From positions 277,991 through 341,990 of the IMG/VR virus record IMGVR_UViG_3300043570_001980: a DNA stretch of 64,000 nt; one strand, given 5' to 3'. Position 1 is the first letter of the stretch; the number at the start of each line of letters is the position of its first letter. A model generated the notes under the pieces. The model ran no database searches and was not told the DNA's origin. It worked only from the letters and a program-made list of their open reading frames with translations. Of the stretch, positions 9,827 through 60,602 are shown one piece after another. The position numbers and the translations under genes are program-made.

Positions 9827-10465
9827 ATGAAACAAGACTGGTTAGAGTTTTACCGAAAAAACTATTACAATTTATTAAACCCACGTGTTAGCGCAATAAA
9901 GCGAGGGTTAGTCGATGGCTTATATCAAAGAGCACACGGATTTAACATTATGTTTGCTGAACTGGTAACACGCGGTCAAGATCAGTATCATATAATTGAA
10001 ACTGGCACTCTACGAAATCCCGGAAACTGGAAAGACGGCCAGAGTGCAAAATTATTCACTGAATTTGTGGACATTCACAACGGATCTGTAAGGTCAGTAG
10101 ATATTGATCCGGGTGCATGTTCCTCAGCATCAGCCGCAATACGGTCCAAGAACTTTACAGTTACCTGTAGTGACAGCGTAACTTGGTTAAGCAAACAACC
10201 AGATTTATCTACAGTTGATTTGTTCTACTTAGATTCGTGGGACGTCAAGTGGGAAAATGATCTGGACAGCGCCGAGCACCATTTAAGCGAATTTAAGGCA
10301 ATTGAACCTTACTTGAAATCTGGATGTATTGTGGCCATAGATGACAACAGTAGATTCAAAAACACAAACCAAAGAACTGGCAAAGGTCGTAGGATTGTTG
10401 AATACCTTGAGTCAAAAGGTAAACACCCTGTATACGACGAATACCAAATAATTTATAAGTTTTAA
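9827..10465 (+). CDS. Methyltransferase-fold protein (Methyltransf_24-like)
   Basis: IIETGT, SVDID, DLFYLDS, VAIDDN, GKG. Confidence 0.7.
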   Translation: MKQDWLEFYRKNYYNLLNPRVSAIKRGLVDGLYQRAHGFNIMFAELVTRGQDQYHIIETGTLRNPGNWKDGQSAKLFTEFVDIHNGSVRSVDIDPGACSSASAAIRSKNFTVTCSDSVTWLSKQPDLSTVDLFYLDSWDVKWENDLDSAEHHLSEFKAIEPYLKSGCIVAIDDNSRFKNTNQRTGKGRRIVEYLESKGKHPVYDEYQIIYKF

Positions 10466-11994: not shown

Positions 11995-12561
11995 ATGGCT
12001 ACACGCACATTTAAGTTTTATGGCAAAGCATTCACTACAGGTGGTCCTGTAACAGTGAGTTTAAATTTTAACAATCAACCAGTGTTTACAGGCGCTGTTT
12101 CTGCATCAACAGGAGCAACCCCTGGGAATAATAACGAAGGCCTATCAGAACTGTTTACATTTGAAGCAGACACTTCTGTATATGGTGACATTCCTTTGAC
12201 TTTAACTGTGACCGGTGGTGATTTATTCTACGGCAGAATTACTGCTAATTACGGCGGCGACGTATACACAGTAGATCCAAGTCGTTTACCAGACAGAAAC
12301 AATCCCGACTCTATTCCTGCTGGACCAATTTTTAGTGCTGATGATCCAGGAAGAACCTTTGTAACTGCATCTGTGGATAATTATGTACCAGTAGATTATA
12401 ATGTCACCGATGGAAGAGAAAACGTTCAGATTAACGGAGTAGCGGTTCCTGATAAAAATCCAACTGACCCTGCACAAGTTGGTAGATGGCAATATTTAAT
12501 TACTAACGAAAGCACATTGACTTGCACACAGAAAGTTGTTAGGGCATTGCCTATTGAATAA
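11995..12561 (+). CDS. Hypothetical beta-rich protein, probably a virion component
   Basis: T/G/V-rich 188 aa with its own late promoter and terminator. Confidence 0.55.
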   Translation: MATRTFKFYGKAFTTGGPVTVSLNFNNQPVFTGAVSASTGATPGNNNEGLSELFTFEADTSVYGDIPLTLTVTGGDLFYGRITANYGGDVYTVDPSRLPDRNNPDSIPAGPIFSADDPGRTFVTASVDNYVPVDYNVTDGRENVQINGVAVPDKNPTDPAQVGRWQYLITNESTLTCTQKVVRALPIE

Positions 12562-12674: not shown

Positions 12675-12703
12675 TTGACCATTAAATAGGGTTTTGCTAT
12701 AAT
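12675..12703 (+). promoter_or_regulatory. Early sigma70-type promoter
   Basis: TTGACC-17-TATAAT with TTTGC extended -10. Confidence 0.85.
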
Positions 12704-12766
12704 TATACAATAATAAGTAGCAAGGAATACAAGTTTTGTATTGTTTGCAACAAGATCAACTAACAG

Positions 12767-12795
12767 TTGACCGGTAATTCACAGTTTGCTATAAT
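12767..12795 (+). promoter_or_regulatory. Early sigma70-type promoter (tandem)
   Basis: TTGACC-17-TATAAT with TTTGC extended -10. Confidence 0.85.
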
Positions 12796-12828
12796 ATAGC
12801 ATAACTTAACAAAACAGGAGCCAGATCA

Positions 12829-13860
12829 ATGACGCAAGTACTCGTTCGTAGCGGTAACTACCGCAAACAAACTGTTCGTGGTGTTACTTTTACACTAGTT
12901 AAAGACTACACACAAGGCGCTCGAGGTGGCTTTGTGACAGTAGAAAGCAATGGCTACTTTGGCGCAGAACACAATGTGGTACGCATCAAAGTTGATAGCA
13001 TTCAAGATATAGAAATTGTTGGAGATAACATGCCCAGTGTAAAAGAAACTAAGGTAGTAGAATTTAAACATACTGCTCCGGTGGAAACCGAAGAGCAAGC
13101 AATGGATCGTATTCGTGAGCGATTTGATATCCTGCACGACATGACCAAAGCCTGTGTCAGCGGCGATATCCGTGCTATGATTGTGAGCGGCCCACCCGGC
13201 GTAGGCAAAAGCTTTGGTGTGGAGCAAGAAATTGACAAGGCCTGCTTGTTTGACAAATTGGCTAGCAAACGACTTCGTGCCGAGGTAGTTAAAGGTAGTG
13301 CCACTCCAATTGGTTTGTATCAAACACTTTACAAATTTAGTGACGCCAATTGCGTAGTTGTTTTTGACGACTGTGACAGCATCTTGTTAGATGACGTTGC
13401 TCTTAACTTGCTCAAGGGTGCCCTGGACTCCGGCAAGAAGCGTACTATTTCATGGCTGTCAGAGTCTAGTGCTTTGCGTCGTGAAGGTATCCCAGACCGT
13501 TTTGAGTTTAAAGGTAGTGTTATCTTTATTACAAACTTAAAGTTTGACCAAATGAAATCGCAAAAATTGCGGGATCACTTGGACGCATTGCAAAGTCGTT
13601 GCCACTATCTGGACTTGACCCTGGACACCATGCGTGACAAACTGTTGCGCATCAAACAGATTGCCAAAGATGGTGTGTTGTTTGCAGACTACGACTTTAA
13701 CGAGTATGCACAAGATGACATTATTGACTTTATGCATGTCAACAAAGAACGCCTGCGTGAGGTAAGTCTGCGTATGGCGCTGAAGATTGCAGACTTGCGC
13801 AAGAGCTTTCCTAACAACTGGAAGCGCATGAGCGAGACAACATGTATGAAGAGTGCCTAA
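12829..13860 (+). CDS. AAA+ P-loop ATPase with a small N-terminal beta domain
   Basis: Walker A GPPGVGKS, Walker B VVVFDDCD, FITN sensor 1, ALQSR arginine finger; SD AGGAG. Confidence 0.85.
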   Translation: MTQVLVRSGNYRKQTVRGVTFTLVKDYTQGARGGFVTVESNGYFGAEHNVVRIKVDSIQDIEIVGDNMPSVKETKVVEFKHTAPVETEEQAMDRIRERFDILHDMTKACVSGDIRAMIVSGPPGVGKSFGVEQEIDKACLFDKLASKRLRAEVVKGSATPIGLYQTLYKFSDANCVVVFDDCDSILLDDVALNLLKGALDSGKKRTISWLSESSALRREGIPDRFEFKGSVIFITNLKFDQMKSQKLRDHLDALQSRCHYLDLTLDTMRDKLLRIKQIAKDGVLFADYDFNEYAQDDIIDFMHVNKERLREVSLRMALKIADLRKSFPNNWKRMSETTCMKSA

Positions 13861-13877
13861 TTAGCAGGTAAGGTTAC

Positions 13878-13913
13878 CGGATCATCATTTTAGTCTAGCT
13901 CCTAGATGATCCG
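13878..13913 (+). ncRNA. Candidate structured 3'-UTR RNA carrying an anti-Shine-Dalgarno-like sequence
   Basis: Stem CGGATCATC / GATGATCCG encloses TCTAGCTCCT, the reverse complement of AGGAGCTAGA; function is inferred. Confidence 0.4.
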
Positions 13914-13916
13914 TTT

Positions 13917-13945
13917 AAGGGGTACCTTAGGGTACCTCTTTTTTT
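13917..13945 (+). terminator. Rho-independent terminator
   Basis: AAGGGGTACC-TTAG-GGTACCTCTT followed by a T tract. Confidence 0.85.
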
Positions 13946-13984
13946 ATTTGTATGTGTTGACGAGTGCCGTAAATACAAAATCTT

Positions 13985-60410: not shown

Positions 60411-60602
60411 TTGAATTCACTTGAACGTATCTGGGCCAGAGCCACCGGACATCTAATGGGGCAGACAGATGAAGATCGACCAGATATTCCTATTCTTTCT
60501 TTGCGTGAAGCCAGAATTGCATTGACTTTAAAAACGTTTTGGGTTATAATACATGTAATCACCTGTTTCTTTATTTGTATCAACGTTGTTCATCATTGGT
60601 AG
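60411..60602 (+). CDS. Small membrane protein
   Basis: TTG start; IWARATG..MG..D..D; C-terminal TM helix. Confidence 0.55.
   Translation: MNSLERIWARATGHLMGQTDEDRPDIPILSLREARIALTLKTFWVIIHVITCFFICINVVHHW
60522..60550 (+). promoter_or_regulatory. Sigma70 promoter for uvsE
   Basis: TTGACT-17-TATAAT inside the upstream ORF. Confidence 0.65.

What the first reader, a model, noticed from the sequence alone, without database searches (positions are those of the whole stretch)
13878..13945. Candidate anti-Shine-Dalgarno RNA matching the ribosome-binding sites of early genes (possible early-to-late translation switch)
Seen: between the ATPase stop and its terminator, a 9-bp stem (CGGATCATC/GATGATCCG) encloses TCTAGCTCCT (13894-13903), whose reverse complement is AGGAGCTAGA. 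Genes behind the GGTTGACC early promoters have almost this RBS: AGGAGCCAGA (12816, the ATPase itself, 9/10), AGGAGTTAGA (44782, fully paired with one G-U) and AGGAGCTTGA (45869, 9/10). Weaker matches are at 60601 and 44261. The match extends past the generic AGGAG, and late-gene SDs (GGAGAT/GGAGAA at 11995, 20195, 29653, 52643) lack the extension. Inference: a 3'-UTR-derived sRNA, or a 5'-3' long-range pairing, that silences early mRNAs while leaderless late mRNAs escape; phage bS21 may be a further component. A competing inner hairpin TCTAG-CTC-CTAGA could gate it. I know of no described system like this, but the match is only 10 nt.
Basis: partly seen in the sequence, partly recalled or inferred. 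Interest (0 to 1): 0.78.

Follow-up and report, generated by a model that had tools for sequence, protein, structure and literature searches.

The report
Self-silencing 3' loop on ATPase mRNA
The hairpin after this jumbo-phage ATPase gene carries a loop complementary to the gene's own ribosome-binding site; in well over 100 related lake phages the two sequences change together, so the mRNA's tail most likely folds back on (or is released to bind) its head to limit translation.

Summary
A 9-bp stem (13878-13886/13905-13913) presents TCTAGCTCCT (13894-13903) between the ATPase stop and an intrinsic terminator. The loop matches the ATPase RBS AGGAGCCAGA (12816-12825) at 9 of 10 positions.

On its own this match could be chance. 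Relatives make it real. In 74 of 77 ATPase loci of the first scan (75-100% identity), a CTCC motif lies within 55 nt upstream of the first strong terminator of the ATPase unit. Its flanks co-vary with the ATPase RBS:
- GGAGCCAACC with GGTTGGCTCC
- GGAGTTAAA with TTTAACTCC
- GGAGTTGGC with GCCAACTCC
- GGGCTAGTAA with TTACTAGCCC

Swapping partners among 69 distinct RBSs never matched the cognate pairing energy in 20,000 permutations. Whole-mRNA folds of ten relatives all put the 5'-3' pairing in the minimum-energy structure (P at least 0.93 in nine, 0.31 in one).

Best reading: a 3'-terminal anti-RBS element that shuts off translation of its own mRNA, as in S. aureus icaR. Whether it acts in cis or in trans is unresolved.

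The element is single-copy, and a holin-like gene's RBS does not co-vary with the loop (P 0.36, against 0.007 for the ATPase). The window's own pair is slightly mismatched and probably follows recombination.

The parts
12675..12703 (+). Upstream early-type promoter (TTGACC-N17-TATAAT, TG-extended). It stands in tandem with the proximal one and would add a leader of about 90 nt.
   Evidence: the sequence
12767..12795 (+). Proximal early promoter of the ATPase unit (TTGACC-N17-TATAAT). The predicted transcription start is near 12802.
   Evidence: The same promoter type sits before the ATPase in relatives.
12815..12827 (+). Target: Shine-Dalgarno plus spacer of the ATPase mRNA (CAGGAGCCAGATC; core AGGAGCCAGA 12816-12825). 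Start codon at 12829.
   Evidence: duplex with the loop -14.4 kcal/mol, opening cost 2.2
12829..13860 (+). AAA-type ATPase gene, 343 aa (phrog_1250, function unknown; weak DnaC-like and AAA hits). Homologues occur in Pseudomonas jumbo phage PA5oct and in T4-like phages.
13878..13913 (+). Hairpin 1: a 9-bp stem enclosing an 18-nt loop that presents the anti-RBS.
   Evidence: Relatives have the same hairpin with unrelated stem sequences.
13892..13904 (+). Anti-RBS segment of the loop (AGTCTAGCTCCTA; core TCTAGCTCCT 13894-13903). It pairs with 12815-12827 as 6 + 4 bp around one C.A mismatch.
   Evidence: L011 has an identical loop with a perfectly matching RBS.
13917..13947 (+). Intrinsic terminator: a 10-bp stem, a 4-nt loop and a T run. 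It ends the ATPase transcription unit.

Best explanation
The hairpin loop at 13887-13904 is this phage's copy of a conserved 3'-terminal 'anti-RBS' element of the ATPase transcription unit.

Proposed mechanism:
1. The unit is transcribed from the early promoter and ends at the terminator at 13917-13947.
2. Just before the terminator, a stable hairpin displays a single-stranded sequence complementary to the Shine-Dalgarno and spacer of the first gene, the ATPase.
3. While the mRNA is being made it can be translated. Once the 3' end exists, the loop pairs with the RBS and blocks 30S binding.
4. The pairing could be within the same molecule, or come from 3' fragments left after decay acting on other copies.
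5. ATPase output per transcript is therefore capped, or fed back on.

Shown: the structure, its conservation, and selection for complementarity. Inferred: that pairing represses translation, and the timing.
For: Position:
- In 74 of 77 loci with ATPase 75-100% identical, a CTCC motif lies within 55 nt upstream of the first strong terminator downstream of the ATPase.
- The motif sits 7 to 1737 nt after the ATPase stop, depending on how many small ORFs intervene.

Covariation with the ATPase RBS:
- 30 of 48 distinct cognate helices are 8-11 bp long, with many different sequences: GGAGCCAACC, AGGAGCTAGA, GGAGTTAAA, TGGAGCAACA, GGAGTTGGC, GGAGCGAAA, GGGCTAGTAA, ACACGGA, GTTAATCCACA.
- Partner permutation gives P 1.4e-4 and 5.6e-4 with an RBS-blind definition of the element.
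- Over 69 distinct RBSs, 0 of 20,000 permutations reached the observed energy: cognate -15.0 against non-cognate -12.0 kcal/mol. A mock region after the terminator shows no difference, -5.9 against -6.1.
- The helix sequence changes repeatedly inside tight ATPase clades, for example L283 within the GGAGCCAACC clade, L177 against L185, and L154 against L172.
- L055, which lacks a GGAG SD, also lacks the motif; for L031, also without GGAG, I found no complementary motif by eye.

Structure:
- The anti-RBS is always unpaired. It is either in the loop of hairpin 1, whose stem differs completely between lineages, or directly 5' of a small hairpin.

Thermodynamics:
- Whole-mRNA folds place the SD:anti-SD pairing in the MFE of all ten relatives folded, with P at least 0.93 in nine and 0.31 in the tenth.
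- The accessibility-corrected net energy for the window is -11.0 kcal/mol, within the relatives' range of -3.7 to -15.8.

Specificity:
- The motif is single-copy in each genome.
- The ATPase RBS is the top-ranked partner of the loop in G004, tied top in G001 and fourth in G002.

Precedent:
- The icaR 3'-UTR UCCCC motif pairs with its own SD, blocks initiation and creates an RNase III substrate (PMC3868564).
- aSD-like sequences hundreds of nt away pair with the RBS in vivo (PMC12697547).
Against: - There is no direct RNA evidence. The metatranscriptome contigs cover only pieces of the ATPase gene of relatives. One contig runs through the terminator, and DNA carry-over cannot be excluded.
- In this genome the pair is imperfect (one C.A mismatch; two mismatches in L006). 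The pseudoknot-free fold of the window's full mRNA gives the pairing P = 0.005. The window's RBS ranks only 8th among the loop's partners in its own genome.
- G.U against A.C counts give no strand signal.
- The permutation units are not phylogenetically independent, and recombination could move the two ends together.
- Repression, as opposed to stabilisation, is inferred only from the duplex covering the SD and spacer.
- The host and its RNases are unknown.
Confidence: 0.7

Rival explanations
1. Trans-acting 3'-derived small RNA with a regulon. In this reading the two-hairpin 3' end, about 70-80 nt, is cut off or survives decay, accumulates, and silences several mRNAs whose RBS matches the loop. 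Targets would be early genes and perhaps a holin-like gene, giving a temporal switch.
For: - Two stable hairpins would protect such a fragment.
- In G000 the loop's best partners are other RBSs: the holin-like gene 70206-70778 (genome coordinates) has 11 of 11 perfect pairs at -20.0 kcal/mol, and four early-promoter genes rank 3rd to 7th.
- AGGAGCTA is over-represented in G006 (8 sites against 0-1 for the control pattern) and in G008 (5 against 0). Most of these sites are RBSs, including the holin-like gene.
- The window lineage keeps the loop although its own RBS drifted.
Against: - The holin-like RBS does not co-vary with the loop across 8 genomes (P 0.36), whereas the ATPase RBS does in the same genomes (P 0.007).
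- Orthologues of the other candidate targets have non-matching RBSs in relatives.
- The loop extension is only in the top 4-20% of 5-mers for fit to the early RBS set.
- No internal promoter lies before the element, and no discrete RNA has been observed.
Confidence: 0.17
2. The same 5'-3' pairing exists, but its role is to stabilise the mRNA rather than to repress it. It would shield the 5' region from endonucleases or 5'-end-dependent decay, as in B. subtilis hbs.
For: The covariation shows pairing, not its sign. In hbs mRNA a 14-bp 5'/3'-UTR interaction modulates RNase Y cleavage (PMC5737220).
Against: Here the duplex covers the SD itself and the spacer up to the start codon, which should exclude 30S subunits. 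In icaR and in the aSD-like screens the same geometry lowers translation and stability (PMC3868564, PMC12697547).
Confidence: 0.08
3. Nothing special in this window: an ordinary pair of 3' hairpins (an mRNA-stabilising stem plus a terminator) whose loop resembles an SD complement by chance.
For: The match in the window alone is short, anchored on the generic AGGAG, and has a mismatch. The full-mRNA fold does not use it.
Against: - The loop sequence is identical in L011, where the RBS is a perfect 10-nt complement.
- Dozens of distinct RBS/element pairs among the relatives keep complementarity through different sequences.
Confidence: 0.03
4. A DNA-level feature: short inverted repeats flanking the ATPase unit that bind a dimeric protein or serve recombination.
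For: Inverted repeats are strand-symmetric, and the G.U/A.C counts do not favour RNA.
Against: - The repeat sequence is free to change as long as complementarity is kept; a protein site would instead conserve sequence.
- One copy is always exactly the SD and spacer, and the other is always unpaired in an RNA hairpin next to a terminator.
- The distance between the copies varies from 1.1 to 2.8 kb.
Confidence: 0.02

Closest known systems
icaR mRNA 5'-UTR/3'-UTR interaction, Staphylococcus aureus (PMC3868564)
   Same: A pyrimidine-rich anti-SD motif in the 3' untranslated end of an mRNA pairs with the Shine-Dalgarno region of the same mRNA species. It blocks the initiation complex. Cis or trans action is unresolved there too.
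   Different: - icaR uses a 3'-UTR longer than 100 nt and a roughly 40-nt pairing region that is an RNase III substrate. Here the helix is 8-11 bp and is displayed in a hairpin loop immediately before the terminator.
- The element here can lie behind additional ORFs, up to 1.7 kb away.
- It is phage-encoded, and it is backed by extensive natural covariation rather than by experiment.
Long-range aSD-like sequences that pair with the RBS (Gill et al. 2025 preprint, PMC12697547)
   Same: Anti-SD-like sequences hundreds of nucleotides downstream pair with the RBS in vivo, inhibit initiation and promote decay.
   Different: Those sequences were synthetic insertions, and such sequences are reported to be depleted from natural genes. 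Here one is positively maintained, extended beyond the SD core, and structurally displayed.
hok mRNA fold-back inhibition (fbi/tac), plasmid R1 (from my own knowledge, and as cited in PMC3868564)
   Same: The 3' end of a full-length mRNA pairs with its 5' end and keeps it translationally inert, so translation depends on transcript state.
   Different: - hok pairing is with the very 5' end (tac), not directly with the SD.
- It is relieved by 3' trimming and belongs to a toxin-antitoxin system with the Sok antisense RNA.
- No such partners are seen here.
3'-UTR-derived small RNAs, e.g. SdhX (PMC6393394)
   Same: A regulatory RNA module made of a seed plus the mRNA's own terminator hairpin at the 3' end of an operon transcript.
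   Different: Those are released by RNase E, act on other mRNAs and depend on Hfq or ProQ. Here the covarying target is the parent mRNA's own RBS, and release has not been shown.
B. subtilis hbs 5'/3'-UTR interaction (PMC5737220)
   Same: A conserved long-range pairing between the two UTRs of one mRNA.
   Different: The hbs pairing overlaps an RNase Y site and protects the mRNA. It does not sequester the SD.
Phage T7 gene 1.1/1.2 mRNA 3'-end pairing with the gene 1.2 RBS after RNase III processing (Saito & Richardson 1981; recalled from memory, not checked here)
   Same: A dsDNA-phage early mRNA whose 3' end can pair with an upstream RBS and inhibit translation.
   Different: As I recall it, that pairing was revealed by mutations at an RNase III site. 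It is not a conserved, loop-displayed element before an intrinsic terminator.

Membership tests
icaR-type 5'-3' UTR anti-SD interaction (functional class) | An anti-SD motif in the untranslated 3' end of the same transcription unit as the target SD. | tested here: met
   The motif lies between the last stop codon and the first strong terminator in 74 of 77 loci. In the window it is at 13894-13903.
icaR-type 5'-3' UTR anti-SD interaction (functional class) | Base-pairing with the SD region, supported beyond the generic core. | tested here: met
   Helices of 8-11 bp with compensatory changes; the permutation tests; the tree.
icaR-type 5'-3' UTR anti-SD interaction (functional class) | Pairing prevents 30S binding or lowers protein output. 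| not testable with these tools
   This needs toeprinting or reporter assays. The only evidence here is geometric: the duplex covers the SD and spacer.
icaR-type 5'-3' UTR anti-SD interaction (functional class) | The duplex is an RNase III substrate. | not testable with these tools
   The helix is only 8-11 bp. It could stack on the 7-9 bp stem of hairpin 1, but that is an inference. The host RNases are unknown.
3'-UTR-derived sRNA (type II, processed) | A discrete, stable 3' fragment ending at the mRNA's terminator. | tested here: inconclusive
   Only assembled metatranscriptome contigs were available, so there is no end information.
3'-UTR-derived sRNA (type II, processed) | Conserved seed pairing with mRNAs other than the parent. 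| tested here: not met
   The holin-like RBS gives P 0.36. Other candidate RBSs are not conserved. The fit to the early-RBS set is unremarkable.
Any Rfam family | A score at or above the family's gathering threshold. | tested here: not met
   No hit in the whole window at gathering thresholds. Only sub-threshold matches to terminator-like sRNA models, with E 0.16-0.37.
Intrinsic (Rho-independent) terminator | A G+C-rich stem followed by a T run at the end of the unit. | tested here: met
   This applies to the second hairpin, 13917-13947. Hairpin 1 has no T run and is not itself a terminator.
hok/Sok-type fold-back inhibition | A toxin ORF plus a cis-antisense RNA, with 3' processing that activates the mRNA. 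| tested here: not met
   The gene is an AAA-type ATPase. No antisense promoter or antisense ORF is seen at the locus.

The most novel reading that the evidence does not exclude
The two-hairpin 3' end is released as a stable phage small RNA that acts in trans as an infection timer. As early transcripts pile up, it first shuts off its own ATPase. In lineages with the TAGCTCC loop it would also hold down a small set of AGGAGCTA-type RBSs, including a holin-like gene. That would link early transcription to lysis timing. The window's mismatched self-pair, alongside a perfect 11-nt match to the holin-like RBS, would then be a retargeting event.
Probability: 0.15. Interest if true: 0.85.

Novelty: new variant of a known kind. 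Interest (0 to 1): 0.64.

Why it matters
Pairing between the tail and the head of a bacterial-type mRNA that hides the ribosome-binding site has been demonstrated experimentally in only a few cases. The icaR authors called theirs a 'singular example'. Such pairing has rarely, if ever, been supported by natural covariation.

Here a whole clade of uncultured freshwater jumbo phages keeps such a pairing on one early operon, through dozens of different sequence solutions. The IMG/VR scans returned hundreds of contigs encoding this ATPase. This gives three things:
- A ready-made set of natural compensatory mutants for testing how 5'-3' pairing limits translation.
- A compact, portable design (a hairpin loop next to a terminator) for capping protein output per transcript.
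- A pointer that the unknown-function ATPase, which is conserved in PA5oct-like and T4-like phages, needs tight dosage control.

It also shows that anti-SD-like sequences, which a recent B. subtilis study (PMC12697547) reports as generally depleted from genes, can be positively selected when displayed at a transcript's end.

Tried and rejected
1. Nucleotide search of the region against cultured phages: no match.
2. Rfam, at gathering thresholds and at E-value thresholds: nothing meaningful.
3. A minus-strand gene read from the reverse-complement SD: only a 4-codon ORF (read), and no antisense ORF starts there. Rejected.
4. A general design in which every early operon has its own anti-RBS. I scanned the 103 terminator-like sites of the genome (both strands). 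Only the ATPase site has a hairpin-displayed CTCC. Rejected.
5. A general early-gene silencer: the loop extension fits the early RBS set only moderately. Not supported.
6. The holin-like gene as a conserved trans target. There is an attractive 11/11 match in this genome, but no covariation over 8 genomes. Kept only as a low-probability case.
7. A second gene in G001 with an identical RBS (GGAGCCAACTATG): its orthologue in G002 differs. Judged a coincidence or a cassette copy.
8. G.U against A.C asymmetry, to prove the RNA strand: no signal.
9. duplexfold on long flanks gave spurious extended duplexes. I replaced it with an analysis restricted to the loop and RBS and corrected for accessibility.
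10. Metatranscriptomes: only fragmentary contigs of relatives, no 3'-end information.
11. PA5oct and Cassandra: the hairpin after the homologous ATPase has a 3' arm complementary to the RBS (7 WC + 2 G.U), but the two phages are identical there, so no covariation test is possible. The T4-like phiR1-RT shows nothing similar.
12. The MAFFT/RNAalifold consensus recovers only 4 bp of hairpin 1, because the stems are too divergent to align by sequence. Single-sequence folds show the hairpin in each lineage.
13. I did not build a covariance model; the pattern and terminator scans already answered the copy-number question.

Full report
**What is there.** The window is the last 64 kb of a 341,990-bp IMG/VR jumbo-phage record from lake water.
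- At 12829-13860 (+) lies a 343-aa AAA-type ATPase. It matches phrog_1250 (function unknown), with weak AAA and DnaC-like hits. Its closest cultured homologues are in Pseudomonas jumbo phage PA5oct (47%) and in T4-like phages.
- The gene sits behind an early-type promoter, TTGACC-N17-TATAAT at 12767-12795. A second copy of that promoter type lies at 12675-12703.
- The RBS is AGGAGCCAGA at 12816-12825.
- After the stop codon come hairpin 1 and then an intrinsic terminator. Hairpin 1 has a 9-bp stem (13878-13886/13905-13913) and an 18-nt loop containing TCTAGCTCCT (13894-13903). The terminator is at 13917-13947.

**Chance or not.** Inside this window the 9/10 match is not compelling. It is anchored on the generic AGGAG/CTCCT, and a pseudoknot-free fold of the whole 1146-nt mRNA gives the pairing P = 0.005. 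The decisive evidence is comparative.

Three scans of IMG/VR with ATPase proteins returned about 200 loci, 64-100% identical at protein level.
- *Position.* I defined the element without reference to the RBS, as the last CTCC within 55 nt upstream of the first strong terminator after the ATPase. By that rule, 74 of 77 loci of the first scan have it. It lies 7 to 1737 nt after the ATPase stop, depending on how many small ORFs are inserted. It therefore tracks the end of the transcription unit, not the end of the gene.
- *Architecture.* The element is followed by a terminator whose T run often runs into the -35 of the next promoter.
- *Display.* The anti-RBS is always unpaired. It is either in the loop of a hairpin whose stem differs completely between lineages (CGGATCATC, TCGGCC, GGATTGCC, GATCGC, CCTGGGC, CCCGGGG and others), or immediately 5' of a small hairpin.

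**Covariation.** The nucleotides flanking CTCC change together with those flanking GGAG in the ATPase RBS:

| ATPase RBS | 3' element | Example |
|---|---|---|
| GGAGCCAACC | GGTTGGCTCC | commonest type |
| AGGAGCTAGA | TCTAGCTCCT | L011, L274 |
| AAGGAGCTAG | CTAGCTCCTT | L013 |
| GGAGTTAAA | TTTAACTCC | L071 |
| CAGGAGTTAAA | TTTAACTCCTG | L179 |
| TGGAGCAACA | TGTTGCTCCA | L138 |
| GGAGTTGGC | GCCAACTCC | L177 |
| GGAGCGAAA | TTTCGCTCC | L269 |
| GGGCTAGTAA | TTACTAGCCC | L283, where neither side keeps the canonical core |
| TACACGGA / ACACGGA | TCCGTGTA / TCCGTGT | L192 / L187 |
| GTTAATCCACA | TGTGGATTAAC | L226, pairing shifted upstream of the SD |

- Thirty of 48 distinct cognate helices are at least 8 bp long.
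- Shuffling partners among sequence types gives P = 1.4e-4 and 5.6e-4 with the RBS-blind definition.
- Over 69 distinct RBS strings, 0 of 20,000 permutations reach the observed energy. Cognate pairs average -15.0 kcal/mol and non-cognate pairs -12.0. A mock region just after the terminator shows no difference.
- On an ATPase protein tree the helix sequence changes many times, including inside tight clades: L283 within the GGAGCCAACC clade, L177 against L185, and L154 against L172.
- L055, whose ATPase has no GGAG SD, has no motif before its first terminator; L031, also without GGAG, showed no complementary motif by eye.
- Caveats: the units are not fully independent, and recombination may move both ends together. 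Even so, complementarity is what is kept.

**Thermodynamics.**
- Whole-transcript folds of ten relatives put the SD:anti-SD pairing in the minimum-energy structure. P is 0.93-1.0 in nine of them and 0.31 in L021.
- Hairpin 1 plus a loop:RBS helix has pseudoknot topology. The folding program must therefore give up hairpin 1 to make the long-range helix, which penalises the window's copy with its strong 9-bp stem.
- An accessibility-corrected estimate gives the window -14.4 for the duplex, +2.2 and +1.3 for opening, and so -11.0 kcal/mol net. That is inside the relatives' range of -3.7 to -15.8.

**This window's copy.**
- Its loop is identical to that of L011, where the RBS is a perfect 10-nt complement. 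Here the RBS has one C.A mismatch, and the 97%-identical L006 has two.
- The window's ATPase groups with GGAGCCAAC-type phages. Its 3' two-thirds is 87% identical in DNA to L012 and L023, whereas the 3' element aligns with L011 and L021.
- My inference is that the lineage is a recombinant that joined an RBS of one type to an element of another. The present RBS (CCAGA) lies between the two types: CCAAC in the ATPase's relatives, and CTAGA as needed for a perfect match.

**How widely it acts.** The element is single-copy.
- TAGCTCC occurs once in this genome.
- GTTGGCTCC is intergenic only after the ATPase in three complete relatives.
- None of the other terminator-like sites of this genome has a hairpin-displayed CTCC.
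- In the relatives, the ATPase RBS is the best, tied-best and fourth-best partner of the loop among about 500 genes.
- In this genome it ranks 8th.
- This wider targeting does not survive comparison. The holin-like RBS does not co-vary with the loop over eight genomes (P 0.36), while the ATPase RBS does in the same eight (P 0.007).
- Orthologues of the other candidates carry non-matching RBSs.
- The loop's extension fits the early-RBS population only as well as the top 4-20% of all 5-mers.
- One hint remains. AGGAGCTA is over-represented in two genomes with TAGCTCC loops, mostly at RBSs.

**Interpretation.** The best-supported explanation is a 3'-terminal anti-RBS element that sequesters the SD and spacer of its own operon's first gene once the transcript is complete. 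3' fragments may do the same in trans. Either way, ATPase synthesis from a strong early promoter is capped.
- The pairing and the selection on it are shown.
- Repression, timing, and cis versus trans action are inferred.
- The mechanism is that of S. aureus icaR (PMC3868564).
- It agrees with the finding that distant aSD-like sequences pair with the RBS in vivo (PMC12697547).
- An hbs-like stabilising role (PMC5737220) is the main functional alternative.

**RNA evidence and novelty.**
- No RNA data settle the question. Metatranscriptome contigs show only fragments of relatives' ATPase genes.
- No Rfam family matches.
- My two literature searches found no dsDNA-phage example of this design.
- I therefore rate it a new variant of a known kind, with solid comparative support but no experimental test.

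Noticed in passing
genome G000:C1:70194-70778 (outside the window; locus L225:1195-1779): A holin-like membrane protein gene (190 aa; phrog_3427, E 2.5e-7). Its RBS TAGGAGCTAGA is a perfect 11-nt complement of the ATPase 3' loop. It is the only GGAGCTA in the 342-kb genome.
   Followed up: yes
window 12675-12766: A second, near-identical early promoter stands 92 bp upstream of the ATPase promoter. It would add a roughly 90-nt leader containing a small hairpin (around 12724-12740) and no ORF. Relatives show a single promoter in the 75 nt upstream of the ATPase start that I inspected.
   Followed up: no
Any link to the anti-RBS element is untested.
   Followed up: partly
whole genome G000, e.g. 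genome 17953, 30585, 141228, 144147; window 44782, 45869: Nearly all SD-bearing genes behind GGTTGACC-type early promoters have AAGGAG followed by C or T (15 of 19 listed; exceptions read GGAGG or GGAGA). The reason is unknown.
   Followed up: partly
genome G000, promoters at 9917, 17490, 35603, 38520, 117739: Several promoters of the early type are followed by ATG only 6-7 nt after the -10 box. These are apparently leaderless mRNAs, so leaderless starts are not restricted to late genes.
   Followed up: no
loci L046-L048, L056, L059, L077, L079 and others, between the ATPase stop and the element: Many relatives carry a roughly 30-codon hydrophobic mini-ORF that overlaps the ATPase stop (TAATATGG / TGACATGG). 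The window lacks it.
   Followed up: no
L133:2897-2945 (PA5oct) and L134 (Cassandra): Directly after the homologous ATPase of Pseudomonas phage PA5oct there is a hairpin, AAAGTAGCA/TGCTACTTT. Its 3' arm is complementary to the ATPase RBS GGAGTAGCA and its 5' arm mimics that RBS. The two phages are identical here, so there is no covariation information.
   Followed up: partly
window 12829-13945, compared with L012, L023, L011 and L021: The ATPase locus is mosaic. The 3' two-thirds of the gene (13081-13860) is 87% identical to L012 and L023, while the 3' element resembles that of L011 and L021. This suggests recombination near the stop codon.
   Followed up: partly
relatives, 3' of the element (e.g. 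L009, L037, L077): The terminator's T run is fused to the -35 box of the next early promoter (TTTTTTTGAC), a very compact terminator-promoter junction repeated across lineages.
   Followed up: no
L138:2236-2290: In some type-B elements the anti-RBS overlaps a direct repeat of the following hairpin's 5' arm (AACTGTTG twice). The hairpin's 3' arm could therefore pair alternatively with the anti-RBS, which would make a possible structural switch.
   Followed up: no
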